A stretch of DNA of 64,000 nucleotides from Basidiobolus meristosporus CBS 931.73 (GCA_002104905.1 MCFE01000055.1:124001-188000), one strand, 5' to 3'. Shown: positions 30,587 to 55,535, numbered from the stretch's first letter. Numbers and translations: made by a program. Notes: generated by a model not told the origin, from the letters alone.

Positions 30587-31342
30587 CTAATGATTAGTTT
30601 GATAAATACGGTCGCCACAATCACCAAATCCAGGTATGATGTAGCCCTCCTTGCTCAAGGTGTCGTCTATTGCACCTGCATATACAGTGACATCCGGATG
30701 GGCTTCATGAAGTGCGTCTAAACCGATCTTGGAGGCACACACGCAGACGAACTTGATTCGTTTTATTCCCCAGTCTTTCAGTATGCTGATGGCTTCAACG
30801 GATGTTCCACCTGTAGCCACCATGGGGTCCAGGACTACACACAAGTCGACGTTGGGTTCCTTCGGTAGCTTGTTGTAATATTCCACTGGCTGGAGAGATA
30901 TTTGCTCTCTGTAAAGTCCAAGATGTAGAATTCTAGCCGATGGAACCATTGTCAGGAAGCCTAGACAGCTGGAATTAGGCCACCTATAACAGTACTAGAT
31001 GGGTCGAGCAACGTACCATTAACCAAACCTAGGCCTGAACGCAAAATAGGGACCAGTCCAATCTTATCCTTAAGAGCCTCTCCAGTGTAAGGGGCCAAGG
31101 GACTTTCCAGCTGAAAAGAAGTCAGTTGTGAAAAAACGGACAAACGATAGCGCTAGCAACATTACCTGGCCAATTTCTTTCATTTCCAAATCTTGCATCG
31201 ATTCGTAGGCCAGCAGATAGGCAATCTCTTCCAAGAGCTCGCGTGACTGCTTGGCCTTGGTATTTTTGTCCCTCAGTAGAGATAGTTTGTGAGCAATTAA
31301 AGGGTGCTTGCTGATTGTATGGTTCGGCATATTAGTAGGCAT
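30587..31342 (-). CDS. Uracil phosphoribosyltransferase, bacterial Upp-like type
   Basis: [43 protein letters not shown] (PRPP loop), [12 protein letters not shown] (uracil loop). Two introns. Confidence 0.93.
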
Positions 31343-32857
31343 ACTTGTAAAATACAAGAAGAGTTTTGACTTGTTCGCAGCTATGTTCTTTATTTATACC
31401 CAGGATTGCGTGGAATGGTATATCATCCACATAACACCATACTACCATCCTGAAGGGTGTGTCATAGATGCCACCCATCATGATGGGATTCGTTGTTCTT
31501 ATTTTGGAATATGAATATTTCCCAATACTGAGAATGAGCGAGGGAATGTGAAAATGAGCATGTGAGTAGATATGTGTACAGGTATTGTAAACCAGATGAA
31601 TACCAGGTCTGCTTCTAGCCTGTTAAAATGAGACATTATTCTTGCTAATATCGAGACTACCAATGTCCTCTCTGCAAGTGGGCATTTGTGTAGATCGCTT
31701 GCTGGATGAATAGTGCCTCCTTGATCGTGCGGATAACCAGGGGAGCCCCTATCTCATTCAATGGAGCATACATCGGATGGTTCACTTTGGCAAATTGGCA
31801 TGGCTCTGCGTATTTTAGTAATAAGCCCGGAGCGCCTGGGAGGCTTAGAATGTGCAACTATGTCCCAAAGATACAAATAGGCAATGACACTCCTCCATTA
31901 GCCTTGTACCTCTCCATTTGCGACAATACTCCCCATATTGTGAAACAGCCTCATTGTGGCCTCCCTGAGAAAGTGTATCGTTCATTGTAAGACTACAGCT
32001 AAAACCTATGTAATCGGAAGCAGAATTAATATCGGAGTGTGATTTTGCGATGGGTGCATGGGTTCGAATGGAATTCACTGTTTTGAGTTGCCATAAATAT
32101 GGGAGAGATCATTTGTAGGCGATTGTGGTGACGTAGTGTGAGACCATACATTGAGTGCTACAACAGTCCCATAGCAGTCTTCTGATCTGTATGGGCCCTA
32201 AAATTCAGCAAATCATGCGGGACTTGACCACTAGTTTCAAATACCGTAGTCACCAGAGTGTATGCCATGCTATTCCTATGGATAATATCAGCGGACTCGA
32301 TGGCCGAATCCCATCTACTGAGCTGTGTCTTGACAGGAAGGTAACACGTTCAACGAATCAGTAGTATTCGTTTACCCCTTTGGTCCCGTTACAGATCATT
32401 TGCTACCAATTCTGGGTACTACATTCCCTTTTGTAGCGGAGATCCAGCGAGTTGTGTCTCCCCGTACGAGATAGGGAACTTCGCCAAAATTGATGCTCGT
32501 TGGAGTTGAACCCTTACGTGCGGTGGCATTTGTAGTCTACGTACGAATTACATTATGACTGTTCATTTATTCTCCCTGACCCCTTAATATACTAAGGTAT
32601 CTCGTTCTTGTATTGCCAATGCATCTGTCACTGGATTCTGATTCGCTGTGGCCGTTTGCTAGATTATTATATCTGGTCATGCTTTGTATACCTCGTGCTT
32701 GGAACCAGGTATGATTCTGCTTCAGTAGGCCCTATTTTCTTCCCACCCTATTCTCTCAGCCACTTCCACAAAGCATATATAGAGCCCCAGTTTTCAAAGA
32801 TCCCCTGACTCTATTCTACCTGTTTTCAAGCTACTCTCATATTGACTTAGTCCTCTT

Positions 32858-34596
32858 ATGCCTTCTTCTGAGAACGATTCGCCAATACTGCAAAGGATAT
32901 TAGGATGCATTGAAGAGCTACAGAAAGATCAGCAAAATCTGTCAAGCAAGGTTGGTTAGCCCGTTCAGGTTCGTTTACAGACCGGCCCAAGTACTAATCC
33001 ATATCTTCCATGAAGCTGGAGTCTTTCCAGAAAGAAATCAAGGGACAGCTCGCCTCCACGCTACCAACATCCAGCGCGACAGCCAAACCCGATTCCTCCA
33101 AATCGACTTCGGATAAAAGCTGCTCTACTGGTAAGATAGTCATTGCATGGGCCCTAAAGTTGCCATAAGAATCGCCCTCATTGATATATTAGATCCTGGC
33201 GTAGGGAAACTTCCCTCCCCTGTTCTGGGCCCCATTGAAATTAGCTCCAAAGAGCAGATTCCCCAAGCCAAGAAGCAGTATGGATCAAGAATCATCTTGA
33301 CAAGTAAGCATAGCCAAGAGTAACGCTCCTGTAATTTCACACTAACAAAGATCTGCCTTAGCCTACCCTCACCAAGTCGGCATCAATCCCATCCCTTTGG
33401 AATGGGGTGCCAAAGATGCACAAACTCGCGGACCGGTTGTAGTGTCGCGCCATCCAAATTCATTCAGAGTTCGTAATGCCATTGGGGCTTATGGTGGCTC
33501 CTACTGTATATATCGTGCTCTTGCAGTTGCCATTGGTGAGCTAGAGCCTGCCCACCTTCCCAACTTTGCGAACACCCAGCCCCATGCGGAGATTGGGCCA
33601 CATCCACAATGGTTTGATCCAAAGAAGATTGTTTCCTTCGATCCCTTTGGGCATACTATCGTCCGTGATCACGTTGACCATTTAAAAAACGGCATCGATA
33701 TCCGTCCTACCATCGCCATCACCAAAGCTAACATGACTCTTCCTGATTTGGAGAACAGTGTGACGAAGAAGCGTTTCCAAGTAGACAAGAAGATCGTGCT
33801 CAACGAGAAAGGCGATCTCAGAGTCACCAAAGCTGCTGTAGAGCCAGTGTGGTATCTTCCAGGTGTTGCAGAACGATTCAACATTGATGAAGGAACTCTA
33901 AGACGTGCACTTTTCGAAGATACTGGAGGAATGTATCCGGAGTTGATTACTAGGCCCGACCTAAAAGTGTTCATGCCACCTATTGGTGGCCTCACCGTCT
34001 ACATATTTGGTGATCCGAGCAATGTTTCAAACCCAGAAAAACGCTTGACACTGCGCATCCATGACGAATGTAACGGGTCCGATGTTTTTGGATCCGACAT
34101 TTGTACGTGCAGACCTTACCTCATATACGGTATTGAAGAAGCTGTCAAAGAAGCCCAGAATGGTGGCTCTGGGGTTATCGTATACTTCCGCAAGGAGGGG
34201 CGTGCACTTGGTGAAGTGACGAAGTACCTTGTGTATAATGCACGTAAAAGGCAAGAGGGTGGCGATACCGCAGACAATTACTTCTTACGTACCGAATGTA
34301 TTGCCGGAGTGAAGGACATGCGATTCCAAGCGCTAATGCCAGATGTTCTGCATTGGTTAGGAATCACTAAAATCGACAGAATGATGTCCATGTCGAATAT
34401 GAAGCATGATGCCATCACTAGTGCTGGCATTAAAATCTTGGAAAGAGTTCCAATTCCGGATGAATTGGTGCCCCCAGATTCTAGAGTCGAGATAGATGCG
34501 AAGATCGCTTCTGGTTACTTCACTACTGGCGAGATCCCCACTGCCGAGAAATTAGCTGAAGTCAAGGGTCGTGGTTGGGATGACCTGCAGCATTAG
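32858..34596 (+). CDS. URC1: URC1/Urg1 family GTP-cyclohydrolase-II-like uracil catabolism protein
   Basis: TYPHQVGINPIPLEWGA, RGPVV..RNAIGAYGGSY, GMYPELITRPDLKVFMPPIGG, RIHDECNGSDVFGSDICTCRPY (Zn cysteines), KEGRALGEVTKYLVYNARKR. Three short 5' exons from ATG 32858. Confidence 0.92.
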
Positions 34597-35249
34597 GCAG
34601 CTATCAATAATCTGTCAACCTGTTCGGAATTCAGCGGTTCACGAGCTTTCGGTACTATTTCCCATTCTTACAATAATAATAAAGATAAGCCACTTCAAAT
34701 CCAATCATCACTTAGGATCCGTTTGTATGGATCTTCCAAATGCGGCAAGTACACAGGCGTTGAGCATGAATGCTCTATGATTTCATATCGATTTCTATCA
34801 ACTCAGCAATGTAGTTTATTCGTTGGAGGTCAGGAGTAGTGACGGTGTGAGTTGGAAGCCAGCAGCTTACATGTATATTCAATGATTGCTTACTTTGCGA
34901 CTGGAATTGCGTAATAGTGGCTTGTCTTCAAACCATTGGAAGGCTATGGAAGTGATTGTTTAATTGTCCCAAGCATTTGGGTATTGCGGGAAATTGGGGA
35001 TTTCTGTTCATTAGGTAAGGACATTTCTGAAGTATTTATGATTGCTTTATTGTTTTTATATATACAAAACGAGGTTGGGTGCAGGTAATTGAATTCGGAG
35101 GTTCATAAGGAATAACGTTGGGTGGAGAAGGGTACTGGCCAAATATGATATAATAATGAGGTGAAAGTCAATTCGGGTACTTTATGAGCAGCTGAATCTA
35201 GGTATTGAATGAACGGCATTATAAATGTATATATCTATATCTCCCGTTT

Positions 35250-36813
35250 CTAGGACTCCTGCCCATTGTTGAGCAACCGCATGCTTTGTGTATAAACAAA
35301 GAATGTTGTAGCATTCAACGGAAAGGCTCGAAGAATAGTAGCATTCATACCGCGGAAAAGAACTGAAATCCCTTCCTCACGATAACACTTGATAATACAG
35401 TCCACTACACCACGATAGCGCGGTGTGGCATTATTGGTTACATCCGCTTGAATCTTCGTCTTCACAACATCTATCACAATAAAGGTGTAAGTTGCTACAT
35501 CCACACATAAGCACATCATAGCAAAGTTTACCAAATGGATATGTTGACACCCAAGCACATATACCAGCAAATCCACCGGCAACGATTAACCCGAGAGAAC
35601 CCAAGTCGTCAGTTGATTTCCCGGCTGGGGTTAGCATTCTACACAATATCTCGTACGATACAAAATAGGGACCAAAACTGAATTCACGTAGGATAGTGGG
35701 CCATAAGCCACGATAGCATGCAACTACACCGCCAGCCCTATAGGTTTTCAGGAAGCAATCCATAGGCCCTTTGTAGTAGTTCCTACTTTTCAACTGTTCT
35801 GGCCCTTGGTTTTGCAACCGGATCTTTGCCAATTCCATAGGACAGCTTACAAAGCTGGGCTTGTTTTAATAATGAGCCGCTGGAATAAAATCAGGAAACT
35901 CTCTCTTACCTGTTGACAGTACCAGTTACTATACCCGCAATAAACATCTGTTTATATGTGGCATCTCCATCAGAACCCTGCATCTGGAAATTCAACGCTG
36001 ATTCGTACACACCAAATGCCAGGGCGTTTACTAAAGCCACGCCAGCCTAATCCCAAGAATGTGCCTTAGCTTCAATTGTAATGTTGCGCGACTAGTTACA
36101 GTGCAATCAATCACATACCATTGGTGATGCCTATATTCAGAGAAAGGTACAAGAGTTAAAATCCGTCCGATACATATGGCTTGTTTCCACATACCATTCC
36201 TTTAAATAGACCTCGAACCTAGATAGGATGGACAATTAGTCATAAATCAAGTTGAAAAAGTGCAAAGCTCGCAGTACCCCTTCATATCTGACAATCGATG
36301 AGAAACAATGTGCTGTTCCTCTATATAGAGCATGAGATTTTGTTTGTGTCTGAAGTCTAACTTTGACTAGAATTGTGGAGTTTGGTTAAAAATGGAACTT
36401 CAGGGAGTAATATAGGTGAATAAGCCACGACGTACCAGTATCTGTTAACACGCAGAGTTAAAGAGAGAAAGTATCGAGGGCAAATAGGATAAGTTTAGAG
36501 AGTTGACTATAAGATAGTTTAGTATTCTGAAAGTTTTACCAAAAGGATGACCAACTATTAAACCAGCACAGCCTACAGAAACCCCAAGCTCAGCTATTCT
36601 GCTCCGAATAAAAAAAGTAGACAACAAGAAATACCTCCAAGTGTGCCAGCAAGAAAACTCTTCCACGCAAAGGTGGGTGTGGTAAATTCTACATGAAAAT
36701 AAGCTTTAACTTTGTCGAAAACACTCGGTCCCTACTATACAAAGGGCGCTGGTAACCGTGCATATCTTTGAAAACTTACGAATTTGCTCGTTTTCATATG
36801 AGGCAGTAGTCAT
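35250..36813 (-). CDS. Mitochondrial carrier (carnitine/acylcarnitine or basic amino acid carrier-like)
   Basis: FLAGTLGG, VGHPF, CPMELAKIRLQNQ, YRGLWPTILRE, TYPF|DVVKTKIQ, RAFPLNATTF. ATG at 36813 reconstructed through a phase-1 intron. Confidence 0.88.
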
Positions 36814-39621: not shown

Positions 39622-40696
39622 ATGTCTTCGAACACTTTAATTGTGTATGACTTTGACTGGTAACAGTACGCTACTTGTTGCATCTCTATTAATGCATTTT
39701 TTAACATGGCGCTCGATGCTTCCAAATCGTTTAGGTCCTTAATTGACGAGGATAGGTAACGGTTTGTAGGAAACTTCTCATCGTCCATCTCGCAGCTTAC
39801 ACCATCTTCTCCGTGATTAGTGATAACTTTTTGGTGAGTAAATTGAGCGCGCTCCTGGGCCAAAAAATGAGCACATTCGAGACAGATACGACATGGACTG
39901 AAAATCTGAACGATATTCAGATAGACAAGTCATGGACTGATCTAATGGTAAGCAGAAGCAGCTATTCGCCGTGATATAAGAGTTAATCCATTCTCATTTT
40001 AGAATCAACTTCTGAGTGAGCTTCATGAGTTGGGATTCACTGAGAAGCAAATGGACGCCATATGGGCCCAAATCCCCTTCAACGAGGACATGATCAAAGC
40101 CCTTCATATTGCCAAAGCAGCAAATGCTGATATAATGATCATCTCGGACGCAAATACCATAGCTATATCCAGGATTTTAACCCATTACCAAATCAACAAC
40201 CTATTTACCAAGATCATCACCAATCCAGCCCAATGGAGCGACGAGGGGAAACTTGTGGTGGATCGACTCGTGCCGAAGGAAACGCCACACGGTTGTCGTA
40301 CCATGGCCGAAGGCTATGGCAGGACTTGCTGTGCAAACATGTGTAAAGGACAAGAAATTACTCGGATGATCCAAGAAAAATATGCGAAAGTCGTATACGT
40401 AGGGGATGGTGCGAATGACTTTTGCCCAATCACGAGGCTAAGAGCGTGGGTAATTTCGATTTTCGAAGATCTGACCATTTTTAATCATCCCCTTTCTTTT
40501 TAGAAACGATATAGCGCTTGTACGTCGTAACCGAGTATTAAGCAATATCCTTGAAACGCCCAGCTCACGTGCGCAGATTCAGGCGAATATAATATTCTGG
40601 TCAGAAGCTGTTGATGTTTTAAGCACTTATCAAGGCCTGTTCCAGCCCCTTTCCCAGGAGCCTGATCTTGCCGCAAAGCTAGCCATATCCTATTAA
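39622..40696 (+). CDS. PHOSPHO1/2-like HAD phosphatase
   Basis: Motif I YDFDW|SLIDEDS|D is split over micro-exons 39735-39755 (21 nt) and 39821-39833 (13 nt). Also WTDLM, IISDANT, ITNPA, CCANMCKG and YVGDGANDFCP. Confidence 0.88.
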
Positions 40697-40962
40697 CAAA
40701 TACTTCGGCTCCATTCCTCCATGTGCGACAATAAACAGGATGAAACGTTGAAAGATCAGGGAGATTGTAGCAAGTTCCATAGCAAATCTAGATTGATCTT
40801 AGATTCAATCGACTCCATCTAAAACAAGGAACGGGTAGTCGTATGAAGGAGCATTGCTTTATTGAATATTTGAATTCGCATAAGACCAACATACAAAGTA
40901 TTCTATGAGGTTTTGTGGTAGATTCATTTACGATAAACGTTTAAATGATATGTTACAATGGA

Positions 40963-43900
40963 TCAATGGGTTGGGTTTTTGACGCTTTCAGGCTCTGCAG
41001 TCATTTTCTTCATTTGAGCACTGAGTGCAATGCCAGGAACAAAGGCAACATGGCTTTCGGCACCAATTGCCGAATTGAGCTCTGGGCCTTCTTGAGATTG
41101 GGGCTTGTCGGAAAGATCGATGTCGTTCATATTGCGATTGGGGTCCAATTGTGCATATTTGCGAACCATTTGTAGTTCCTCCATCAATGTTTGATATCTG
41201 AAAGCAAGTCGGATGTCTGGGACGTTCGTCTTGCGCATATCTGTATTTCTCTTGGTTAGAGCGATATTCAATATGAACTTAAATGAGTCAACCTACCATT
41301 GCCATCGGGGCCTGGAATATGACAGGTTTCTCCAACAAAGTGTCTCTTGACTGCCATTTCAAAACCACTCTGCAATACACTATTGCGAGCCAATTCGCAC
41401 ATATCGACATTGGAAAGCTTCCAAATCTGAAGGTAATTGGGTTAGAGAATGATACTTTGATCTGAAGCTAACAGAGGTCGTACCTGAGCTGCAACACTAT
41501 ACTCCTCGATGAGAGGCTCCTTGGTAAAGTGGAATTGAAGTGGATCATCGGTAGAAAGACTGATGTTCAAACCACGACGGAAGAAGGTGGGGAATGGATT
41601 ACGCTCGTAATTTAGGAAGAGAGCGTTGTTACTCAATGGTGACATAGCGAGACCGATCTGCTTCAAGTAGTAGAGGTACTGTAGGGCAGGAACCTTACGA
41701 AGAAGGATTCCGTGATTGATACTCCACGATGTAAGATAGGCCGATGCCAAATGGTCAGTATCACCAGCTTCGCCAGAGTGAGGACGAAGAACAAAGGTAC
41801 CTGTTGGAATGAAGGAGATGAGCTAATGTTGATCAATCGGCTAATTCACAATAGTTCAACTTACAGAATCCACGCTCTTTTCTCCAGTGGTTGAGGGAAG
41901 CGATGTTGGCAAACATATAGTACAGATAGTAGGTGTATGGAGGATTGAGTGGCATATCCCAAGCCTTGGGGAGGGGATATTTACGATGAATACGGCGCTC
42001 AGCCTTACTTTCATCGTCGACACTGTCGAAACCAACCACTCTCTGAAGGAAGATATGAAGATCGGGATGAGTTGAAGGATCTTTGGTAACTTCGAACAGA
42101 GGATGGAAAATATCTATCAAGCGATGGTATCAGCAAAAATTCAACAACACAAAGAAACTTGCTGCGTTAACGTACTGTAAACGATTTGTTCGAAGTTCTC
42201 CACAATCTCAGTGCTCTTGTACACATTGTACAAACGTGGGATTTGAATGAGCCAGCGCACATTAGGAGAGATCAGTTTGTTGTTGATGACCCAGCTGGCC
42301 AGTTTGTCCCACTCGGTAACAGATCTGGGAGCCCGGTTTAGAACGATAGAACAATCAAGTATTCAAAGCAATAGCTAACCTTCCGTAAATTGATATTCTG
42401 TACTCCGCAAGCTGATACTTGCTAGCTTCCAAATCGCCAATTACCTCTGTTCGCAACAATTAGAATCGGGTATCAATATTGTTAAATCCTACAATACGAA
42501 CAACCCACCTTTGGTGAGCTCAGCAAGATAGGATCCCTGGATCTTGTTGTCAGTCTTCAAGAAGATTTCTCTCAATCTACTCTCTCCAATAGGGTTATAC
42601 TTGAGATTGAATTTGTCAAATCGGTGGAAAGAGTCTGTATGGGCCTGTGTAAAAGAAAATCATGTGTTAACGGACGCAGCAGTGCTAGCATATACGAAAG
42701 ACCTATTTACATGCATATCCAGAGTATCAATGCTCAAATCATAGACAGTTAGCTTCAAACTCTCGAATACTTGAGCCAAGGTCAAATCCTTGTCGTCACG
42801 ATGGATAACAACATCCTAGATTACGAAACAACGTTAGTCATCAACCCATTGACCTGAATCCCACGTTGTACATACATCGGGAGTCTTCTTCAACTTGGAT
42901 TTGATGAAGCGTAACAGGTGCTTTTGGTTCATGCATGCGGAATGGTGAACGTGCGTATCTACTTTACGTACGTTGTAGAAATCTCTGTGTGGTACTCGCT
43001 GAAGAAAACGGTTTAAATTCCCATCCAGGTAAATGTATGGGATAAAGATACATTACCTTGGAGTCAGCGATTTCTTGATATTCGTTTAATAGCGCGTACA
43101 GATCCCACTTGCTCTCAAGGTAGCGGAGTCGATCAAAAGCGAACGATTTATTTTGGCCATCAGATATGACACCTAGGATGTATTCTAGGTCCTGATAGTA
43201 ATCTTTGATAGATGGGATGCGATAAGAGGGCTTTCCCTTCTCCAATTCTGCGACAAATCATTAAAACTAGGCGTCAAGTAAGATGATTACGTGAGCCTAC
43301 GAACCTTCTTGGGAATGATAGACTTGATATACACCATTTGCGTCCATTTTGAATTCATACTTGAAGATCGTCAGATAATGAGCCGTTAATTGTAAACTCT
43401 GAATAACCTTCGTACCTGGTGCTTCTCAGGCATTTTGAAATGAGCTTTGTCAAAGTCATGACCGACTGAAAACTCGCCAGACTTCGAGCCTGGAGGGGGC
43501 GGTGGGGGATAGATTTCCCACCCAGGATGGTTTCTAGGATCATCGGTGGGTCGTTGCAAGGACAGAGCCATGTACTTGTCACGCAAGTCCATACATTTCT
43601 GGATATTGGTATAGATTTGCTTTAGCTCCTCGTTGTATTCCTCATCTAGAATGAGGGTTAGTTCCATTTTCATTCGCGATAAATGAAGGTGGACATACCT
43701 TGGACATGCATAGCCTGATAGGCAGCAACCAGGGCTTGAATTCCTTGAGGGGTGCGATTGTCATAAGAAGCTCTACGAGAAAGAATAGGCTCCTCCTCGG
43801 TGGCCTTGACCTGGTGGGCAATGATCTTGGAATCCTCCTGTTGTTGTGTTTAGGATTAGAAAACGCCAAGCTAAGGTGGAGCGAAGGGATACTTGCATGC

Positions 43901-44022
43901 TTCAATGCTTTCTCAGCATGGTAACTGTAGAAAGGGCTGTTTGGGTTCAAGGACTCGTCGGTTGAGAACAGAGACTCATCGGTATCAGTATTTTCGACGG
44001 ATTGAGTATCAAGATTCTCCAT
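40963..44022 (-). CDS. AMD1: AMP deaminase
   Basis: [66 protein letters not shown]. Multi-exon, start MENLDT at 44022. Confidence 0.93.
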
Positions 44023-47000
44023 ATTGACTTGAAAATTAGAAACTCCGGGTGACGGAATGAAGCGGCTTTTATAGTTCCAGCTGAAGTAAGAATTATCAGG
44101 AGAGACACCAAATAGGAAGATGACCAGACAGATACCCAATCTTGCATAGTTAAATTAAAATTTTTCTATCATATATCCAGTTTAATCCGTGGTAGTATCA
44201 ATCCCAACCTGTAGCCATAAGGAGATGTTTTCGCTTACAAGACCATATTTGGATCACGCTGTGGCTGCATCAGGTTGATTACGACAGTCTCACAGGACCA
44301 GCTTGCTGAAATTGATGAATCTCAATTTTGCAAAAATTTCAATCGTGTAGCACCCAATAGAATTCGTCATCTATCTAATGGGATTTGGTGGAATGCGCGA
44401 TGTCTGATAAAGTCGTATTTGACGGCCAGTAAGATTGCCGCCAATGAGGACCTGAAACCACCGGATGAGTAGTTCGCTAGGGATCATTGGCCCGCGTGGA
44501 TGGCATCCTGATGGCCGTTGGGAGAACTAGATTGGAGTAACAGAACGCTACGCAGAAGGCATCCCCAGGAGATTAGGTTGAGCAATTCATGTCAACGCGA
44601 CCAAGACATATTGGCCAGAAGTAGCAACGCACTCTGCCCGTCCTGGGTGAAAAAGGAAGCTATGTTACTGCTGTGTGGTCGCACAGGTGCCGACACACAA
44701 GGAGAATAGCTACTATTTTAAGATACCTAGGTTACTCCGCAATTCATTTCAAAATGATAATCCTGGTGGAACGGATGTTCTCAGAGAAATGTTACATGGA
44801 ACGCAAGAGCCCATAAATGGTTTCATTCACAATGAAGCTGCGGCCGATAACTTGTCCTTTTTAGCCTCACTTGATTGTTGCATCGGTGGCTTGAGCCACT
44901 TTGCGAATTAGCTGGGTGAGGCTTGTGTTGTTGGATCATCGACTACCATCTCGTAGGGCTCAATCGTATTGCAGTTTGGGGTTCTGGGTACTAGAACATC
45001 TCTTACATCTCTTATTCTGAATAGAACGGAAGCGATTTAAGGTTATCTGGCGAGATGTACCAAGCGTGGCTTGATGTCAGTGTGGCTGCACAAACCAAGC
45101 ATGCCTGGGAAGGAGCCATTCGACACAAGGATGGGGGAATTTTGTTCCTCACGAGGTCCCAAGTGTCACTAGCCATTCTGTGGAAGTGGCCATTTGGATG
45201 TATCACATGTGAGTAATAATCGTAATAGATACTACTCTATTGCATATGCGTGCCTATATTTATCGGCTTCTGTGAAACAGGCTGATTATGGAAAAATCCT
45301 CCAAGAACCATTACCATATATCTGGTGAAAAAAAAAACTTTAAATGCCATGAGAATCTTGAGTAGCTTAACGTCGTATCCCGTTCTATAGCACCTTCTCC
45401 ATATAGAGCTGCAGAGAACCAATATGATTCGCCTTTCGCAACGCAGAGTGATTCTCTAGACCGTAATAGTTGTTCAAGAAGTCCGGGCCCCTTGTAATAT
45501 TAGACTGTTGTGCGGGCTGGGGCTCCGTAGCTAGTTTAATGGCAAGGAAAATGTAACCATCAACCAGAATATGCGGATTTGCCTGCGAAAAGCCGGGGTT
45601 CGTCTGTATAGACAAAATATGCGCTGGTTTTAGATAACCTTGTTCTGTTCAATGAATTTTTTTCAATGCAAGTGATCTCACTCCTACTGGATTCAGATTG
45701 TAGCCACATGTATGGAGATTGAAAGCAGAGTTGTTGTCGGGTTAGGTAGACCTAGATCGATGAAGATCCCTGATCATAATGTGCTTAGCCTGCGATGTTT
45801 TTCCTTAATACATGCTCATACGTTTGGGGACTGCATTGCTACCATTTTCAGTATTTGTATTGGCAGGATGGCGTAACCTCATTTTTACCTTGTGCATATG
45901 GCTTGATTGGCTTGATTGGCTAGATTGTTTATACACCATTTCTCAAGCACTGCAGTGTTGAATGTATCAAAACATTGGCAAGTCTAGAATTTGACGATGC
46001 ATCTTCCTAATCCATTCCAGGTAGTTTCCAACGTAATCTAATGATGCAGTTCATCGAAAATCGTTGCAATCAAAAATCCAAGGTGTTCTTGAGAGCTGGG
46101 ACCAGTCGTGTTTTTTTGAACCTCGATTATCATTCATTCCCCTTCGGAACTTGTTTTCAGTTTTCTCTTCGGCCCAGAATAGGGCTTCTCCAAGGATTTA
46201 CTTGCTCCTTTGGCTTACTCCTGCTAGAAGTAAGTGCTAGGGGGCCATAACCGCGCCCAGCAACGTCCCAGAGCGTCCACCAAAGCCCTGACCTGGCACC
46301 CAAAGATGTCCCAATAGATTTTATGCTGATTCCCCGGCTCACTCCTTTTCAAGTCATCTCGCACACTTACCTATTTTAGTTATATTGTCTCCCTATAGAT
46401 TTTCAAAGATTCGCACCTTTGCGCTTGATATATAGAATCACAGATGGTTCATTGGTCCTTATCGACAAAAACAGACAAATGACCGGCCTTTCTGCTAAAG
46501 TAAGCAACTTGGGACAGCTTAATGACCATTAGAAATATGTACGAGAAAGATCTCTCTATAAGGATGTGAAGGATTTTTCCACAATAGAGGCTAGTAAACT
46601 AAATATTCCAAATGAATAACATGTATTATGGTTTTGCACTTTGCTAATCTTTTGAGCCTAAATCCTGAACAGAACGCCGCAGCCACCTCAAGAATCAAAC
46701 AATTTTAAGTTAGGTGTATTGAAAGAGCAGGTAGATTAAGCATAAATAGTATGTTTATACTTTAACTAGATCTTGACAAAAAACATGTAGAATATGTTTT
46801 GAAAAATCCCAACATGTGTTGAAAGCTTGGGGGTTTTCGGACAGCTTTTATGTTCTGGGCACGGGGCATTTTGGTGTAAAACAAAGCTTACTCATAGTGT
46901 CAGATTTAAAAATTAGTCAAATGGTTATTACAGGATAAAGTAGCTGCAGTACTTGCTTATCCAAGCTACAAATCAACTATTTGCGCATATTTGTTCATAT

Positions 47001-47378
47001 TGGTCAGAAAGGCATAAAAATCAATTGGAGTGTTTGATACAGTGTGTTTCATAATGTATATATATCCACCAATTTCATCTGTGCCAAATGCCTTTACAAG
47101 ATACTAGGGAGTATTGGAAGTGATTTGGAGATCTAGAAGAATTGCATGATACTCACTTTCTGCTTTACTGAGTGCAAATAAAGTATTTGTACTTTTGGAA
47201 AAGCATTGTAAGAGTAATGCTCAAAGTACATTATGAAATGTTACCAGAAGTGGTTTGCAAAGTTTGGGGGCTTTTAACAAGTTTGAAAAATCTTGGTAAC
47301 TATCAGACCTTCACTTGGATAACATCTTTGGATTCTATTTAGCTTATTGCTAGTTTGTGGATTATATAAGCTTTAGTT

Positions 47379-48297
47379 CCCAAGATATGCAGTGTTGTAA
47401 ATTTTGTAATTACACCTAAATATTCACCTAGCTCAGCCACTTGGATCATAGTCTACAAATTTTAGAGAATTCTGGTCAGACTCCTTGCTGAGACTTACTT
47501 GGAATATTTTCACCAAAACATCAGGTACCCAGAGCATGAAGTATCAATAAGTTCTCCGCACAGCGCCAATTCTTGCACACATGCTATTGGGACCTTCTTG
47601 AATATATTATACATGTTCGCTTTGCCAAGATCGTATATAAGTATAAATATTACTTTTACATTCAATAAGCAATATTTAGCATACCGACAAAAATGCTCTC
47701 AAGATGGATCAAAAAAGCTTTTCCTATAAGTTGGAAACTTTTGGGAGGGTTTGGGATATTTTGCAGCATACAGCCTTATTGTATAAATGAAGAATACACG
47801 CACAATACACACTTGGTAAATAAACATCCGCTCCACAACAAAGAAAGCACTCTATCTCAGATATTGGGTAGCAAGTTACTGAACTAGTGATTTGTAACCA
47901 ACAGAATTCAGCTGCTTCTTATTGTAAGAGTTTTGGAGATATTGAAAGTGATTGAGAGAGCAAGTAGATTATGTGGTTTTCACTTGATGCTTTTTTGAAT
48001 GTAAAAGTAGTATTCATACTCTTACATAGTCTGTGCAGAACAAATATCTGGAATATGCTTATGAAGGTCCTAAGAGCATGTGGACAAGTTGGCCCAAAAA
48101 CATGTGTGCAAGGTTTGGGGCTGCTTAGACAACTAATCAAAATTTCATGTTCTAAGTATCTGATATTTTGCTGAAAATATTCTAAGCAAATCCCAACTAA
48201 AAACTTGCTCAGAACTCTCTAAGATTTGTAGGTAATGATCCAAGTGACTAAGGTGAATATCTAGGTGTAGTTACAAAGCTTACAACACTTCTCTTGG
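47379..48297. mobile_element. Foldback/MITE-like relic: diverged inverted repeats of about 290 bp (47379-47665 and 47995-48297) around a spacer of about 330 bp
   Basis: The reverse complement of the left arm (TTGAATGTAAAAGTAATATTTATAC...GAAGGTCC...CTGATGTTTTGGTGAAAATATTCC...CAGAATTCTCTAAAATTTGTAGACTATGATCCAAGTG...TTACAACACT) matches the right arm (TTGAATGTAAAAGTAGTATTCATAC...GAAGGTCC...CTGATATTTTGCTGAAAATATTCT...CAGAACTCTCTAAGATTTGTAGGTAATGATCCAAGTG...TTACAACACT). The TE class is inferred. Confidence 0.65.
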
Positions 48298-49984: not shown

Positions 49985-50852
49985 ATGGATTATGAACACG
50001 AGATGTTTCCGCACACCATGAACATGGTGATATCTGCTTTGTCCATCCCTATAGGCTTGTCGAATACCATCAAGAGCGTTAAAATGCTTCGATGCGAGAA
50101 CGCGTTCATCTACCAGCTGAACCTGGCTCAATCCTTCATCCTCCTGGTAAGCAAATTGGCCCAATCCATCTTTATCCTTGGTTATCTGTCCGAATGCCAG
50201 TTTGTAATCTTCTTCGCTGCGATAAGCTACTACCTGTCCACGATGCTAATCGAGGCAATCCTGATCACCAAGGCATATTATGCCAACATGCGCTCCAAAT
50301 TGATCATGGGGACTGGTGTTCTTATTGAGCTGGGTAGACTTTGCATCCACATCTTCATCTTAATTCACATCCAGGCCACGTATACGACCCTCGGATCCTG
50401 CTTCTCCTTTGGAACCAACACACTCTTCACCTTTCTCGTTGCTACCGAGGGATGTCTGGTCATCTTCTTGACCACAGCATTCATATGTGGGCTCTGGCGT
50501 ATCTCCCGTGAACAGAGTAGTGGAATCTACTATAGCCTTATCAAAGATGGCCTGATCTATTTGCTTGGGATTTGTCTAGTGATTTCGATCATTATCTTGC
50601 TGATTGCTACCGACGTGGCGCCTCCCATCAATGGCTATTTCTTAGACTTCGGCTGTAAGTGAGCGTTTTTCAATGTACAGAGACTATGTAAAGAGACTGA
50701 TAGGGCTTGTATTTCAAGGGGCCACTAGCTCCCAGCTCATAACCGAGCAACTTTACGAGTCTCATCGACGACGAAAGAAAAGAAGCGACAGGATGAGCCG
50801 CAGTCACATCAACAGCGGCCAGGATTTTCTTTCGGACAGGCTGTATGAATAG
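49985..50852 (+). CDS. Orphan 7-transmembrane (GPCR-like) protein
   Basis: About seven hydrophobic segments with paired extracellular Cys (SECQ, LGSCF). Intron 50655-50718, last exon WATSSQLITEQLYESHRRRKKR with a basic tail. Confidence 0.65.
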
Positions 50853-52939
50853 TACGCCAGCGCATGTGGTTGGTATGTTGGAGGCTGTGTGGCGTACCCG
50901 TAGGGGTTCATTGCGACGAGCACGAATGCGGCTAATGTGTAGTGAGCCATCGAAGTCTGCTAGATTGGCTAGTAAAATAAATGTTTGATAGAAGCAATTA
51001 GTCCTGCAAAGGCGATTGAATGGTCGTACAGGCTCTTGAACATATCGGTACGGCACCTTATTTGAACCAAACATGTGGTACAGCACGTTGTCTATGACCA
51101 GAATAACGCTATGCTGTCTGAATCATGAATCCAACAAGATTTTCACCTTTCTGATTTGCAACATCAATAGCTGTTCTCACCGTACATCATGCGTATATAG
51201 CTTGGTGGAACAGAATAGTGATTCGGCGGCCCAATTTATCTACATCTCCTCCCTATATGTCATGATAATCTCTCAGGATTACTCCCTAGCACATAATTGG
51301 CGTATGGAAGGTTGGTTAGATGAATCTAGAGTAGATGGTAATTACCTTGGGGTTGCAGCGGTTTCCCGCCCATATCACTTCCATTGGTTAGCCGGAATTG
51401 GGTCGCCCATATGAAAATATCCCGGTTGTTGAGGGTTCAGGCCATCGTGCTACTTGGCTGCCCTGTTGCAGAGGAGTTGGCGAGCCGTAGGGAATTGATG
51501 GGCCGTGGCATGGTGAGATTTCGTCCTGGAGCTTTTTCATTTTGGAGCCCGATTCGTACGACAATCTCCACTGATTCTAGCGAGATTAACCCATACTCGA
51601 GAGTGATTTGTGTTGACGATTTGTGTCCGAAAATGAGCTATATGTAGCTATGATGATCTTCATGCCAACGTGGTATGTTTCCAGTGTCTCACTGAGCTGA
51701 TTGGAGCCTCGCATTTTAGTCGATTCCTCTGCAACAAGCCAGCCACGAGATACACAATCCACTGACTTACTCCAGACAGCGTTGACACACTCCAGGTCAA
51801 GCCAGTGTAGTTCTGCACGAGTATATTCCACGAAGATCCGAGATCACACTGATATATCCTCATATTCCGGGTTGTTTGAGATCTGCTGGTTGGGCCGTGG
51901 ACTGTAATGACAATAGATCGTTTATTAAATGGCACTGATGGTGATGCTAATTCCTAGATTCCCGACTGCCTTATGAGGGTTGATTTGGCAGAGAACGCAG
52001 CGAACGGTGCCAACTTGACCGTTATAAATCGAGGCAGTCGAAGCCAATTCGCTGCTCACAGAGACTTCAAGTGCAACCTAATAACAAGGAAATAGATCCA
52101 CCCATCTGTTGCCTCAACAGCTAGAGGTGTATACCACCTGTGGCTATAATGGTTTTCTCGTAGTGCGAGCCATTTCCTACTGTAGGCAAACTAATTAGCT
52201 CCAGCCGCTTTCATTGATGATGGAACGCGCGGTACGAGTTCCTAAAAAGTCATCTCTACCCAATAGGTAGCACACATGGCGATACACACCGGCTGTGATC
52301 AAGCGTAGTGAATAACATAACTGTGGTAGGCTATTTGAGTCTAAAAAGGTCACATTTGGGGTTCTTGCTTTGGAAGTCATCGAGGTAATCAGGTTCACAG
52401 TACGCTGAGCAAACCAATATAGTCCCCGTAAAATGATCACGAGGGTTTGGGCTTAGATCGGGTGATATGAATAGGCCAAAAGCCTGTTGTGGCACATTCG
52501 TCTAATAGCTTACTGGAAGCACTCTATCGCGTTGATCCTTTTTTGCACTTGGGTACTTTCATCACAAGATGATCAGGAAGTACGTAGACTAGGACAATCA
52601 TGCACTTCTAGAAGCAAAGAAATTTCGATCTTTGTGTACGGGGTATCATTGCTAGTAAGGCTCAAGCATGTATCTATTTCCGTATGATACTTTCAAATAT
52701 TGACCGATGCTCGTACTATCACCAGTGCGCAGCCATACTTTGCAGCGATCAGCTATATACAGATTGCGATAGTTGACTAGATGTACAATATATACTATAC
52801 GCGAACAATCAGTGTTTTTTATCAAACCTAAAGGCATCAAGACCTGCAATCTGAGCCGGGGGGAAATAGGTCAACAGAAGCACAAAGATGCCAAGTGGTT
52901 GATTCTGCAGATATCTAATATAGATGTATTTTGAGATTT

Positions 52940-53350
52940 CCGCATATTAGATAGTTCAGAAGCAAGATTTCCCAGTCGTTAATACTCCTAGGTATTGTAG
53001 TTTTCAAAGGATGCCAAACCGCTAACCCAGTGTATCTTTTGCCCACCAGTTTGAAGTGTTGTAGAGCAGTGGCTCCATCTTCTGTCTTCAAAACGTCCTT
53101 GGGTTCACCAACATGGAATCTTTGAAAAATAATTGCAATGTGTTGACAATATATCATCTAACTGTTACATATACAGGTATGGAATTCTCCAATTTCAATT
53201 CACATTCAAACCTCAAGCTTTTAGAAGAATCTGGCTTACATCCACACCAGCAGGGCTAGTAATGGCAACTGTTTGATCATTCTGATAATGTATAGCGTTT
53301 TACATTTTTTTGTACTAAATGGTAGACACGCTGATATCAATCCGATAGAT
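52940..53350 (+). pseudogene. Possible decayed paralog of the 49985-50852 7TM gene
   Basis: Fragments SKISQSLILLG and LAYIHTSRASNGNCL align with SKLAQSIFILG and LIHIQATYTTLGSCF, in the same order, among stops and frameshifts. Confidence 0.3.
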
Positions 53351-54081
53351 GATCCACAAAGGTATGTCAGGTAACTTACCTCAAGGTTGCTGCCTCTATG
53401 AGCATGTATTCGTCTCATTGTTTGAGCTTTGAATGGTAGAAATGCTGTGGAATAGGTGGATATTCCCTCCTATTCATGGTCGGCCCATAGTGTTATCGGT
53501 CTAGCACATTCTTTGAAAGTAGAAATGCTTGGAATTGTTCTTCTGAACTAGATGCATAATTCATTACGAATTGGATGAATGCCATGGACCACCAGATGTG
53601 CTTTGTGTATACCGGACGCTAATTTCGTAGGTGGTGCACACCTCAGACGATTTGGTTATGTCGTGCAGGAAACCCAGGTTTGGTTTTGGATCACACGCTG
53701 GCTATTTGTTCGCTGTAGTGGCTAAGCCACCATACAAAGAAAATGGTTTTCTATGGAAGCGATCTTGGTGAATTAATAAGGCGTATGGAAAGGAAGGCTC
53801 TCCCGCAAATTACGTTTCAAACTCCTATTCCCGCCCTCTTCATTCAGTGGCGTACAATTTGGTGGGAACATTATTATGTTTGGGCTTGCGTCATGTAATT
53901 TGTTCAATTAATCAGGTGTCTGTGTCTTACTCGTGACCGGTACAACGTGTTGCCATCCTTTTAAACAACAGTCACCACTCTGCTCTCTCTTACAAGAGCA
54001 GTCTTTAGTAGTGTTTCCCTTCCAACACTACGCATATACAAACTACCCATCTACAGACATCAACCCCAGGATTCCTTTCAA

Positions 54082-55535
54082 ATGCCGACAAGCCTTGATA
54101 TGGAAGCGCAACTCAAGGAATCAATCGCTTATTTGAAAACCTTGACAGCAGTGCGGGAGAGATCGCAGCAAATATTTGACCTTGTCACCAAGAAAGACAA
54201 AGGGCACTTTGCCGTTCACTTGAATAAACTAGAGAATGTTGCGGACTTCGTCCTAGATATTATCATGCGAGATTACGATTCACCTAAAGAAGTGCCTCCC
54301 CATAGTCGTTGGAGACATTTTGATGTTGGAGGTGTTCCACGGGTTCAGCAGCTGATTGATTCCTGGTCCGGTAAAGCGGAGAAGCCCGAGTTGACCCGAA
54401 GAATACTAGACCTATTTGTTGTGTCGGTGCTGTTGGATGCAGGTGCTGGAAATGTTTGGACTTACAAAGAGTCTAGTACTGGAAGTGTCTTCAATCGTTC
54501 CGAAGGACTCGCCATAGCTTCATTGGCTATGTTCAATTCGGGTGCATTTTCGAGCGATCCTAATCAACCATATCAAGTAGACGCCGCTGCCTTACGGAAA
54601 CTGACAGTAGGCCAGCTCAGCGATGGCTTCCAGGTGTCCGAAAAGAATCCGTTGGAAGGATTGCAAGGCCGTTGCGAGCTACTCAACCGACTAGGAGAGG
54701 CACTGCAGAACAACCCGCAGTATTTCGGCAAAAAAGAAAATGGTGAACCGAGACCAGGAAATCTGCTGGATTATCTGCTAAGCATCGCCAAAAACAACCT
54801 GTCCGTCCCGATCGATAGATTGTGGGAGGCAGTCATAACCGGCTTCTCTCAAGTGTGGCCTTCCACCAGAACCGTCATCAATGGTGAATCGCTGGGTGAC
54901 GTATGGCCGTCAGACATTCTGAAAGGTATTGAAGGCAAAGGTCTCCCTACCGACGAGCTAGTACCGTTCCATAAGTTGTCTCAATGGCTCACGTACTCTC
55001 TGATGGAACCCATGACCAAGGTGATGGGAATCAAATTCGAGCAAGTTCAGAAAATGACTGGTCTTCCGGAATATCGGAATGGTAAGACGCATGGCATCGA
55101 ACTTCAATAGCATTGGTATTCACGGATATTTTAGGTGGATTGTTTGTAGATCTTGGAGTATTGACCCTCAAGGACAATGACCAAGAGAGAGGGCTTGCAC
55201 AAAGTGATCAATCAGGGAAAGAGACCGTGCCCAAATTTGCTCCCTTCGATCCTGTGGTAGTAGAATGGAGAGCTTTGACAATCGTTCTCTTGGATATGAC
55301 AGCAGAAAAAATCCGGGAGAAACTTGGGGTGAACAGCGAGGAGCTGCAACTGGCATCTATACTGGAAGGCGGAACTTGGAAAGTAAGTCGTTAGTTAGGC
55401 TATGTCGTGGTGAACGCATTGGACCCAATCTGATTGCGATCTATCAATTAGGCCGGCCGTGAGATTGCTGCCCAACTTCGCCCCCAGACGAAGGGCCCTC
55501 CTATTGCAATCGTTTCCGATGGTACCGTTTTTTAG
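54082..55535 (+). CDS. URC4: URC4/Urg3 (DUF1688) uracil catabolism protein
   Basis: YLKTLTAVRERS, VPPHSRWRHFDVGG, LFVVSVLLDAGAG, RSEGLA, FHKLSQWLTYSL, TGLPEYRN|GGLFVD, VEWRALT, LEGGTWK|AGRE, SDGTVF*. Confidence 0.92.

What the first reader, a model, noticed from the sequence alone, without database searches (positions are those of the whole stretch)
30587..55535. Uracil-catabolism (URC/urg) gene neighbourhood in an early-diverging fungus
Seen: UPRT (30587-31342), URC1/Urg1 (32858-34596) and URC4/Urg3 (54082-55535) all lie within 25 kb, interleaved with a mitochondrial carrier, a HAD phosphatase and AMP deaminase. Established: URC1, URC4 and a UPRT (URC6) are core parts of the Lachancea kluyveri URC pathway, which goes through UMP to urea and 3-hydroxypropionate. 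S. pombe urg1-urg2-urg3 are clustered and uracil-induced, and several steps remain biochemically unresolved. Inference: a partly dispersed ancestral cluster whose extra members may identify the missing steps or transporters.
Basis: partly seen in the sequence, partly recalled or inferred. Interest (0 to 1): 0.75.

Follow-up and report, generated by a model that had tools for sequence, protein, structure and literature searches.

The report
Relic uracil-catabolism gene cluster in Basidiobolus
Three uracil-breakdown genes (UPRT, URC1, URC4) lie within 25 kb in the fungus Basidiobolus meristosporus as the stretched remnant of a unit that is a tight operon in many bacteria and a tight cluster in fission yeast, and the genes between them look like unrelated passengers.

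Summary
The window is Basidiobolus meristosporus CBS 931.73. It holds UPRT (-, 30587-31342) head-to-head with an intact four-exon URC1 (+, 32858-34596). URC4/DUF1688 (+, 54100-55535) lies 19.5 kb downstream.

The "dispersed ancestral cluster" reading is supported.
- The divergent UPRT/URC1 pair recurs in Mucor, Chytridium, Dimargaris and Syncephalis.
- Syncephalis has URC4 22 kb from URC1, in the same order and on the same strand.
- Unrelated marker genes (Sel1, SecE, an F-box gene) tie these neighbourhoods together.
- In 80 bacterial genomes that carry DUF1688, 51 have a tight URC1-URC4-UPRT operon.
- The linked UPRT is of the bacterial Upp type, not the FUR1/URC6 type.

The "extra members" reading is not supported. 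The mitochondrial carrier, PHOSPHO-type phosphatase, AMP deaminase, YccF and RidA recur in none of the 11 fungal or 80 bacterial neighbourhoods.

A confident URC4 model matches the Qng1 queuosine-5'-monophosphate N-glycosylase (Z about 28). This suggests URC4 cleaves (phospho)ribosylurea, perhaps with no phosphatase step.

Linkage of these three genes is already known from S. pombe (and, from my memory only, reported for bacteria), so this is a new, loosened member of a known cluster. The scan also noted this same stretch in an overlapping window, not on other DNA.

The parts
30587..31342 (-). UPRT, bacterial Upp type (210 aa, about 3 exons); the divergent partner of URC1
   Evidence: Pfam UPRTase E 9e-42 and 3e-9 on two exons. 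100% match to B. meristosporus P0241. Nearest solved structures are bacterial Upp chains. The PRPP motif [11 protein letters not shown] and the motif [11 protein letters not shown] are visible in the translation.
31343..32857 (.). 1.5-kb divergent intergenic region between the UPRT and URC1 start codons; presumed shared promoter
   Evidence: Head-to-head arrangement read. The same arrangement, with 316-345 bp spacers, occurs in Mucor and Chytridium. Promoter function is inferred, not shown.
32858..34596 (+). URC1 (urg1 orthologue), 517 aa from four exons: 32858-32950, 33016-33130, 33193-33303, 33362-34596
   Evidence: Pfam GTP_CH_N plus GTP_cyclohydro2. 73-76% identity to fungal URC1 proteins, which some sources name 'Uracil-regulated protein 1'. 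N-terminal exons placed by tblastn and by reading the splice sites. The Cys-x10-Cys-x-Cys motif (CNGSDVFGSDICTC) is present.
54100..55535 (+). URC4 (urg3 orthologue, DUF1688), 437 aa; exons about 54100-55083, 55134-55391 and 55452-55535; an alternative in-frame ATG lies at 54082
   Evidence: Pfam DUF1688 E 1.7e-176 on P0121. 100% tblastn match. AlphaFold model pLDDT 94.3. Match to Qng1/DUF2419 at Z 27-28.7.
27933..29018 (+). Sel1-repeat gene. It is a synteny marker, not a pathway gene.
   Evidence: Pfam Sel1. Its orthologue lies 2.6 kb from URC4 in Syncephalis (72% identity over 103 aa) and 2.8 kb from URC1 in Gigaspora.
35250..36700 (-). Mitochondrial carrier, convergent with URC1; an intervening gene judged unrelated
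   Evidence: Pfam Mito_carr. It is adjacent to URC1 only in the congener B. ranarum and absent from the other URC1 neighbourhoods.
39800..40700 (+). PHOSPHO1/2-type HAD phosphatase (PF06888); an intervening gene judged unrelated; its ends are approximate
   Evidence: Pfam Put_Phosphatase E 2e-31. No homologue in 80 bacterial URC neighbourhoods. Absent from all other fungal URC loci examined.
40963..44139 (-). AMP deaminase (multi-exon); an intervening gene judged unrelated
   Evidence: Pfam AMP_deaminase on five exon pieces. No recurrence near URC genes elsewhere.

Best explanation
This region holds the loosened remnant of a three-gene uracil-catabolism module made of a Upp-type UPRT, URC1 and URC4. 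In many bacteria the module is a co-directional operon, URC1-URC4-upp. In early fungi it was probably UPRT(-) URC1(+) URC4(+).

In Basidiobolus the UPRT/URC1 head-to-head pair survives intact and probably shares a bidirectional promoter. URC4 has been pushed 19.5 kb away by insertion of unrelated genes: a mitochondrial carrier, a PHOSPHO-type phosphatase, AMP deaminase, a membrane protein, and about 9 kb with no annotated gene. URC4 therefore remains linked by descent.

The inferred pathway has three steps. UPRT makes UMP from uracil and PRPP. URC1, a zinc hydrolase of the GTP cyclohydrolase II type, opens the pyrimidine ring to give a ribosylurea derivative plus a C3 acid. URC4, a helix-hairpin-helix N-glycosidase homologous to Qng1, releases urea from ribosylurea or, more likely, from its 5'-phosphate.

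Shown here: gene identities, the conserved linkage and the fold. Inferred: the chemistry and the co-regulation.
For: Gene identities.

UPRT(-)/URC1(+) pair: it is directly adjacent in Mucor lusitanicus and Chytridium lagenaria. It has one RRM gene inserted in Dimargaris and Syncephalis. Equal contig lengths or consecutive gene numbers place the two genes together in Syncephalis fuscata, Endogone, Ambispora, Blyttiomyces helicus (a 5.2-kb contig), Dispira parvispora and Bifiguratus.

URC4 linkage: in Syncephalis plumigaleata URC4 is on the same scaffold, 22.2 kb beyond URC1, in the same order and on the same strand as here.

Bridging markers:
- Sel1 lies beside UPRT here, beside URC4 in Syncephalis and beside URC1 in Gigaspora.
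- SecE lies beside UPRT in Dimargaris and beside URC4 in Syncephalis.
- The same F-box (FBO_C) gene lies beside URC1 in Syncephalis and beside URC4 in D. xerosporica.

Bacteria: of 80 genomes with DUF1688, 51 carry URC1+ URC4+ UPRT+ with gaps of 2-400 bp, except in a few Microcoleus and Tolypothrix loci where the gaps reach 870-1,262 bp. A further 16 carry URC1+ URC4+. One Xanthobacteraceae locus carries UPRT- URC1+ URC4+.

The UPRT is Upp-type. The S. pombe urg1-urg2-urg3 genes are clustered and uracil-induced (PMC2174524). The URC4 model has pLDDT 94.3 and matches Qng1 at Z 27-28.7 with rmsd about 3 A over 313-332 residues. The title of PMC9881137 names queuosine-5'-monophosphate as the biological substrate of Qng1.
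Against: URC4 lies within 25 kb of URC1 in only 2 of the 6 URC4 neighbourhoods read.

There are no expression data, because no RNA run was listed. No shared promoter motif was found between the UPRT/URC1 spacer and the region upstream of URC4.

Several adjacency claims rest on matching contig lengths rather than on coordinates.

The phosphatase-free chemistry is inferred. From my memory, L. kluyveri urc4 mutants accumulate ribosylurea rather than its phosphate. That could mean a phosphatase acts before URC4.

The catalytic Lys and Asp of Qng1 could not be mapped onto URC4 residue by residue.
Confidence: 0.7

Rival explanations
1. One reading: the whole 30-61 kb stretch is an extended functional uracil-catabolism cluster. 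The mitochondrial carrier, the HAD phosphatase (dephosphorylating phosphoribosylurea), AMP deaminase, and perhaps RidA or YccF supply missing steps or transport.
For: A phosphatase step between the URC1 product and ribosylurea is chemically plausible. The steps between UMP and ribosylurea are described as uncharacterised (PMC7530994). The carrier next to URC1 is conserved in B. ranarum. An unrelated HAD_2 hydrolase lies 5 kb from URC4 on a metagenomic eukaryotic contig.
Against: None of these families recurs next to URC1 or URC4 in Dimargaris, Syncephalis, Mucor, Gigaspora, Chytridium, Rhizophagus or Batrachochytrium. None has a homologue anywhere in 80 bacterial URC neighbourhoods, and no phosphatase is among the recurrent families there. 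The genes that separate URC1 from URC4 in Syncephalis are wholly different: F-box, ANAPC2, Ku, L28, EMC7 and SecE. B. ranarum is 93% identical in URC1, so a shared neighbour is expected in any case. The Qng1-like fold of URC4 suits a 5'-phosphate substrate.
Confidence: 0.07
2. URC4 lies 19.5 kb from URC1 by chance or by lineage-specific rearrangement. Only the UPRT/URC1 pair is an inherited unit.
For: URC4 is on a different contig from URC1 in most species where both could be compared. It has unrelated neighbours in Rhizophagus, D. xerosporica, Batrachochytrium and the metagenomic contig.
Against: Syncephalis shows the same order, the same strand and a similar distance. For any one genome of tens of megabases, two given genes should fall within 25 kb of each other roughly one time in a thousand. 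Three independent marker genes bridge the URC1 and URC4 neighbourhoods across lineages. The genes are immediately adjacent in bacteria and in S. pombe.
Confidence: 0.12
3. The three genes entered Basidiobolus recently from bacteria as an operon. The genus is reported, from my memory, to hold many bacterial genes.
For: The UPRT is of the bacterial Upp type. A bacterial-type YccF gene sits beside URC4. Bacteria carry the operon.
Against: All three genes have spliceosomal introns. All three are much closer to other early-diverging fungi than to bacteria: URC1 75% against about 60%, URC4 57-59% against 43-49%, UPRT 66% against 39-49%. The pair is shared with chytrids and Mucoromycota. Any transfer between domains would therefore be ancient, and its direction is unresolved.
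Confidence: 0.03

Closest known systems
Schizosaccharomyces pombe urg1-urg2-urg3 cluster (SPAC1002.19, .17c, .18)
   Same: It has the same three families: a URC1-type GTP cyclohydrolase II-like protein, a UPRT and DUF1688. The UPRT is on the strand opposite to the other two. The S. pombe genes are neighbours and are rapidly induced by uracil (PMC2174524). They are orthologues of L. kluyveri URC1 and URC4 (PMC3869809).
   Different: In S. pombe the three genes are immediately adjacent, with URC4 lying between UPRT and URC1. Here UPRT and URC1 are adjacent, and URC4 is 19.5 kb away beyond at least five unrelated genes. Induction is untested here.
Bacterial URC1-URC4-upp operon (cyanobacteria, Legionella, alphaproteobacteria, myxobacteria, Bacteriovorax)
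   Same: It has the same three families at 53-64%, 43-49% and 39-49% identity to the window's proteins. 51 of 80 loci have all three in a row. One Xanthobacteraceae locus has the fungal-style UPRT(-) URC1(+) URC4(+) layout.
   Different: The bacterial unit is co-directional and tightly packed, mostly with gaps of 2-400 bp, and has no introns. Its recurrent extras are an aldehyde dehydrogenase, an amidohydrolase and a ureidoglycolate-lyase-like protein. None of these is in the window. From memory, Andersen et al. 2008 (J Mol Biol 380:656) already reported this linkage in bacteria and some fungi. I could not open that paper.
Lachancea kluyveri URC pathway (URC1-6, URC8)
   Same: URC1 and URC4 orthologues are present, and a UPRT supplies UMP. 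The pathway yields urea and 3-hydroxypropionate. Its middle steps are not characterised (PMC7530994).
   Different: URC6 is described as the uracil phosphoribosyltransferase of that yeast (FUR1-type, from memory), whereas the UPRT here is Upp-type. No urea amidolyase, URC8-type dehydrogenase or URC2-type regulator was found in this window.
Qng1 / DUF2419 queuosine-5'-monophosphate N-glycosylase (PDB 7ugk, 7uk3, 7u91)
   Same: The URC4 model superposes on nearly the whole Qng1 chain, at Z 27-28.7 and rmsd about 3 A over 313-332 residues. Both belong to the helix-hairpin-helix glycosylase fold. 33 of 96 DUF1688 proteins give sub-threshold Pfam Q_salvage hits.
   Different: Identity is only 14-17%. 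URC4 is about 110 residues longer. Profile searches do not connect the two at sequence level. The substrate would be a ureido-ribose rather than a 7-deazaguanine nucleotide. Equivalence of the catalytic residues was not verified.

Membership tests
URC / urg gene cluster (URC1 + URC4 + UPRT) | A URC1-type protein with GTP_CH_N followed by a GTP cyclohydrolase II domain | tested here: met
   Pfam E 1.5e-80 and 6.5e-17. 73-76% identity to fungal URC1/urg1 proteins.
URC / urg gene cluster (URC1 + URC4 + UPRT) | A DUF1688 (URC4/urg3) protein | tested here: met
   Pfam DUF1688 E 1.7e-176 on the annotated protein P0121.
URC / urg gene cluster (URC1 + URC4 + UPRT) | A UPRT gene next to URC1 | tested here: met
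   The start codons are 1,515 bp apart on opposite strands. The same pairing is seen in four other lineages.
URC / urg gene cluster (URC1 + URC4 + UPRT) | All three genes immediately adjacent, as in S. pombe and in bacterial operons | tested here: not met
   URC4 starts 19,504 bp after the URC1 stop, with a carrier, a phosphatase, AMP deaminase and a membrane-protein gene in between.
URC / urg gene cluster (URC1 + URC4 + UPRT) | Co-induction by uracil | not testable with these tools
   No RNA sequencing run was listed for this stretch.
URC / urg gene cluster (URC1 + URC4 + UPRT) | The organism grows on uracil as sole nitrogen source and forms urea plus 3-hydroxypropionate | not testable with these tools
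   This needs culture and tracer work.
URC6 / FUR1-type eukaryotic UPRT | Closest similarity to the eukaryotic FUR1 / Toxoplasma-type UPRT rather than to bacterial Upp | tested here: not met
   phmmer against PDB chains gives E 1.7e-61, 2e-57 and 9.5e-51 for the bacterial chains 1i5e, 1v9s and 2ehj. It gives 2.5e-24 to 8e-23 for 7rh8, 1upf and 1bd3. The source organisms of these entries are from memory.
Qng1 / DUF2419 (Pfam Q_salvage) N-glycosidases, for URC4 | Shared fold over the whole catalytic domain | tested here: met
   Foldseek probability 1.00, E 1e-8. VIA-align Z 27-28.7, well above the next group, the HhH DNA glycosylases at Z 8-11.
Qng1 / DUF2419 (Pfam Q_salvage) N-glycosidases, for URC4 | Reaches the Pfam Q_salvage gathering score | tested here: not met
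   P0121 scores 17.0 bits against a cut-off of 25. 33 of 96 homologues give weak hits, the best at E 1.1e-6.
Qng1 / DUF2419 (Pfam Q_salvage) N-glycosidases, for URC4 | The helix-hairpin-helix catalytic Asp and Lys (D231 and K199 of StQng1, PMC9881137) | tested here: inconclusive
   K292 and D333 are invariant in 96 URC4 homologues and lie in the segment that aligns to Q_salvage. No residue-level alignment to a Qng1 chain could be obtained.
Extended metabolic gene cluster including the carrier, HAD phosphatase and AMP deaminase | Accessory genes recur beside the core genes in other genomes | tested here: not met
   There is no recurrence in 11 fungal or eukaryotic neighbourhoods, and no homologue in 80 bacterial neighbourhoods.

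The most novel reading that the evidence does not exclude
URC4/DUF1688 is a Qng1-like helix-hairpin-helix N-glycosidase whose physiological substrate is 5-phosphoribosylurea. On this reading Upp, URC1 and URC4 alone convert uracil and PRPP into urea, a C3 acid and ribose-5-phosphate, with no phosphatase step. That would explain why exactly these three genes travel together from bacterial operons to fungal clusters. The ribosylurea seen in urc4 mutants would then be a dephosphorylated side product.
Probability: 0.45. Interest if true: 0.6.

Novelty: new member of a known kind. Interest (0 to 1): 0.4.

Why it matters
The middle steps of the URC pathway are still described as uncharacterised (PMC7530994). 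This locus does not supply new pathway genes. Comparing it with other genomes does sharpen the question in three ways.
- The conserved unit is three proteins, including a Upp-type UPRT distinct from FUR1.
- The UPRT/URC1 head-to-head pair has been kept from chytrids to Zoopagomycota, which points to a shared regulatory region.
- URC4 has the fold of a nucleotide N-glycosidase, so its reaction can be tested directly with ribosylurea against 5-phosphoribosylurea.

The locus also gives a worked example of how an operon-like cluster decays in fungal genomes. The spacing runs from adjacent (bacteria, S. pombe), through one inserted gene (inferred for early Zoopagomycota), to about 20 kb (Basidiobolus, Syncephalis), to unlinked.

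Tried and rejected
- RNA evidence: the look-up of sequencing runs listed no RNA run for 30400-34800, so read laying was not used and expression is untested.
- Shared cis-element: shared 9- to 12-mers between the UPRT/URC1 spacer and the 1 kb upstream of URC4 were no more frequent than in control pieces. Only one CGG-N-CCG site was found.
- Sequence link from URC4 to solved structures: phmmer with P0121, a 96-sequence profile and a C-terminal sub-profile all failed to reach Qng1 chains. The catalytic-residue mapping therefore stays an inference.
- URC4 tree (FastTree, 96 rows): the eukaryote and bacterium labels need 3 changes, and several metagenomic rows have unknown origin. No donor or direction can be stated.
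- Subtype of the carrier and the phosphatase: the protein-atlas look-ups gave only generic names.
- Bacterial operon extras (aldehyde dehydrogenase, amidohydrolase, ureidoglycolate-lyase-like protein, ABC transporter): they have no homologue in the window.
- The left part of the window holds no URC-type gene.
- The papers by Andersen et al. 2008 and Rasmussen et al. 2014 are not held. What I say of them is from memory.
- Only single exons and the public models P0121 and P0241 were searched.
- The large representative-protein search was not used.
Full report
**What is there.** The window is eukaryotic, intron-bearing DNA. Its URC4 and UPRT proteins are 100% identical to proteins of Basidiobolus meristosporus CBS 931.73, scaffold MCFE01000055.1.
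- UPRTase on the minus strand at 30587-31357.
- A URC1-type protein (GTP_CH_N plus GTP cyclohydrolase II) on the plus strand, ending at 34596.
- A mitochondrial carrier (-) at 35250-35838 and beyond.
- A PF06888 PHOSPHO-type HAD phosphatase (+) near 40030-40503.
- AMP deaminase (-) at 40963-43673.
- DUF1688/URC4 (+) at 54082-55394.

Beyond URC4 lie a YccF-domain gene, a 7TM-RGS gene and a RidA-family gene.

URC1 gave no 100% hit among public proteins. The best hit was B. ranarum at 93%. The gene is nevertheless intact. tblastn with N-termini of homologues, and a direct reading of the DNA, give four exons with GT-AG introns: 32858-32950, 33016-33130, 33193-33303 and 33362-34596, for 517 codons.

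The zinc-ligand pattern Cys-x10-Cys-x-Cys of GTP cyclohydrolase II and the PRPP motif of UPRT are visible in the translations.

**The UPRT/URC1 pair is a conserved unit.** I read the gene neighbourhoods of URC1 homologues within 10 kb on either side.
- UPRT lies on the opposite strand directly upstream of URC1 in Mucor lusitanicus (316-bp spacer) and in Chytridium lagenaria (345 bp).
- The layout is the same, with one small RRM gene inserted, in Dimargaris cristalligena and Syncephalis plumigaleata.
- Gigaspora rosea lacks the UPRT there.
- The B. ranarum contig is too short on that side.

Equal contig lengths, or consecutive gene numbers, also put UPRT and URC1 on one contig in six further species: Syncephalis fuscata, Endogone, Ambispora (genes 2878 and 2879), Blyttiomyces helicus (a 5.2-kb contig), Dispira parvispora and Bifiguratus. 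The head-to-head pair therefore spans Chytridiomycota, Mucoromycota and Zoopagomycota. It is broken in some lineages, namely Paraphysoderma, Tieghemiomyces and Diversispora.

**URC4 is linked by descent.** In Syncephalis plumigaleata, URC4 lies on the same scaffold as URC1. URC1 is at 395320-393613 and URC4 at 371407-369750 of JAIXMF010000004.1. That is 22.2 kb apart, in the same order and on the same strand as here, where the distance is 19.5 kb.

The genes in between are entirely different in Syncephalis: F-box, ANAPC2, Ku, ribosomal L28, EMC7 and SecE. Three unrelated genes tie the neighbourhoods together:
- The Sel1-repeat gene lies 1.6 kb from UPRT here. It has a 72%-identical counterpart 2.6 kb from URC4 in Syncephalis, and another 2.8 kb from URC1 in Gigaspora.
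- SecE is next to UPRT in Dimargaris and 3.7 kb from URC4 in Syncephalis.
- The same FBO_C F-box gene is next to URC1 in Syncephalis and head-to-head with URC4 in Dimargaris xerosporica.

The simplest reading is an early arrangement UPRT(-) URC1(+) URC4(+), later pried apart. Elsewhere URC4 has unrelated neighbours: Rhizophagus, D. xerosporica, Batrachochytrium and a metagenomic eukaryote. The linkage is therefore a relic kept in some lineages, not a rule.

**Bacteria show the core unit.** A scan of one genome per prokaryotic species found at least 596 relatives of URC4. I examined the best 80 loci. tblastn with the fungal proteins gives the following counts:

| Arrangement | Loci (of 80) |
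|---|---|
| URC1+ URC4+ UPRT+ | 51 |
| URC1+ URC4+ | 16 |
| URC4+ UPRT+ | 4 |
| UPRT- URC1+ URC4+ (Xanthobacteraceae) | 1 |
| URC4+ URC1- UPRT+ | 1 |
| URC4 alone, partly on short contigs | 7 |

In the 51 full loci the gaps are mostly 2-400 bp, and longer in a few Microcoleus and Tolypothrix loci.

This fits the UPRT type. The window's enzyme is far closer to bacterial Upp structures (E 1.7e-61 to 1i5e) than to the chains 1bd3, 1upf and 7rh8 (about 1e-23).

All three fungal genes have introns and are much closer to other fungi than to bacteria. Any transfer between domains is thus ancient, and its direction is unresolved.

**The intervening genes.** None of the carrier, PF06888 phosphatase, AMP deaminase, YccF, RidA or the 243-aa membrane protein has a homologue in the 80 bacterial neighbourhoods. 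None recurs in the other fungal loci. Only the 93%-identical congener shares the carrier.

The recurrent bacterial extras are different: an aldehyde dehydrogenase (6 loci), an amidohydrolase (8), a ureidoglycolate-lyase-like protein (7), and regulators or transporters confined to one clade. A 50%-identical aldehyde dehydrogenase also lies two genes from URC4 in Batrachochytrium. That fits a malonate-semialdehyde product. None of these extras is in the window.

**Mechanism.** A 96-sequence alignment gave a URC4 model with mean pLDDT 94.3.
- Foldseek finds only the queuine-salvage enzyme Qng1/DUF2419, at probability 1.00 and E about 1e-8.
- The second aligner gives Z 27-28.7 at about 3 A over 313-332 residues, covering almost the whole Qng1 chain.
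- Helix-hairpin-helix DNA glycosylases follow at Z 8-11.
- One third of DUF1688 proteins give sub-threshold Pfam Q_salvage hits.

Qng1 hydrolyses the N-glycosidic bond of queuosine-5'-monophosphate (PMC9881137). That paper does not mention URC4, and no held paper links DUF1688 to DUF2419.

URC4 is therefore best read as the N-glycosidase that frees urea from ribosylurea, in line with the genetic assignment quoted in PMC7530994. Its substrate is possibly the 5'-phosphate. No phosphatase would then be needed, which agrees with the three-gene bacterial operon. This last step is inference. K292 and D333 are invariant and are candidate catalytic residues, but I could not map them onto Qng1.

**What is known and what is not.** The S. 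pombe urg1-urg2-urg3 genes are neighbours and are induced by uracil (PMC2174524). They are the URC1 and URC4 orthologues, and URC1 and URC4 are conserved in bacteria and fungi (PMC3869809). From memory, Andersen et al. 2008 already stated that URC1, URC4 and UPRT are linked in bacteria and some fungi. I could not open that paper.

The locus is therefore a new and looser member of a known cluster. The breadth of the UPRT/URC1 pair in early-diverging fungi, the Upp-type identity of the linked UPRT, and the Qng1-like fold of URC4 are additions that I did not find in the held literature.

**Limits.**
- No RNA run was listed.
- No shared promoter motif was found.
- Neighbourhoods could be read only to 10 kb on either side.
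- Some adjacencies rest on contig lengths.
- The same stretch was also noted by the scan in an overlapping window.

Noticed in passing
window 32858-34596: URC1 gave no 100% match among public proteins, although URC4 and UPRT from the same scaffold did. The gene may be missing or mis-modelled in the public B. meristosporus annotation, even though it reads as an intact four-exon gene.
   Followed up: partly
window 55976-56371 (-): A YccF-domain (PF03733) inner-membrane protein gene lies right after URC4. To my knowledge this family is mostly bacterial, so it may be one of the bacterial-origin genes of Basidiobolus.
   Followed up: no
window 47432-48252: A large imperfect inverted repeat: arms of 160 and 97 nt, 73-74% complementary. 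It sits inside an AT-richer stretch with no annotated gene between AMP deaminase and URC4, and may be a foldback or transposon relic that helped to spread the cluster.
   Followed up: no
L043, L056, L079, L088, L089, L024; L012:13728-15974: An aldehyde dehydrogenase sits next to URC1, just upstream of it in L043, L056 and L089, in delta-proteobacterial and myxobacterial URC operons. A 50%-identical one lies two genes from URC4 in Batrachochytrium. It is a candidate malonate-semialdehyde dehydrogenase of the pathway.
   Followed up: partly
L027, L032, L034, L036-L038, L055, L067 (Microcoleus and relatives): A gene with an adenylate/guanylate cyclase domain is inserted between URC1 and URC4, giving a constant gap of about 1,196 bp in this cyanobacterial clade.
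   Followed up: no
L008:11908-13232 (-): In Syncephalis an ECH_1/ECH_2 enoyl-CoA hydratase or 3-hydroxyisobutyryl-CoA hydrolase-like gene is convergent with URC4. This could relate to handling of 3-hydroxypropionate, or could be coincidence.
   Followed up: no
window 57580-59007 (-): A single-exon 475-aa protein with an N-terminal 7TM region (weak 7tm_3 hit) and a C-terminal RGS domain. It looks like a fungal GPCR-RGS fusion.
   Followed up: no
window 60136-60564 (-): An intronless RidA/YjgF-family gene (PF01042) lies 4.6 kb beyond URC4. It is not found near URC genes elsewhere.
   Followed up: partly
window 365-961 (-), 9477-11114 (+), 17348-17917 (-): The left part of the window holds a protein with a GATA_AreA domain, a cystathionine beta-synthase-like gene (PALP + CBS) and a second mitochondrial carrier. 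None of them is URC-related.
   Followed up: no
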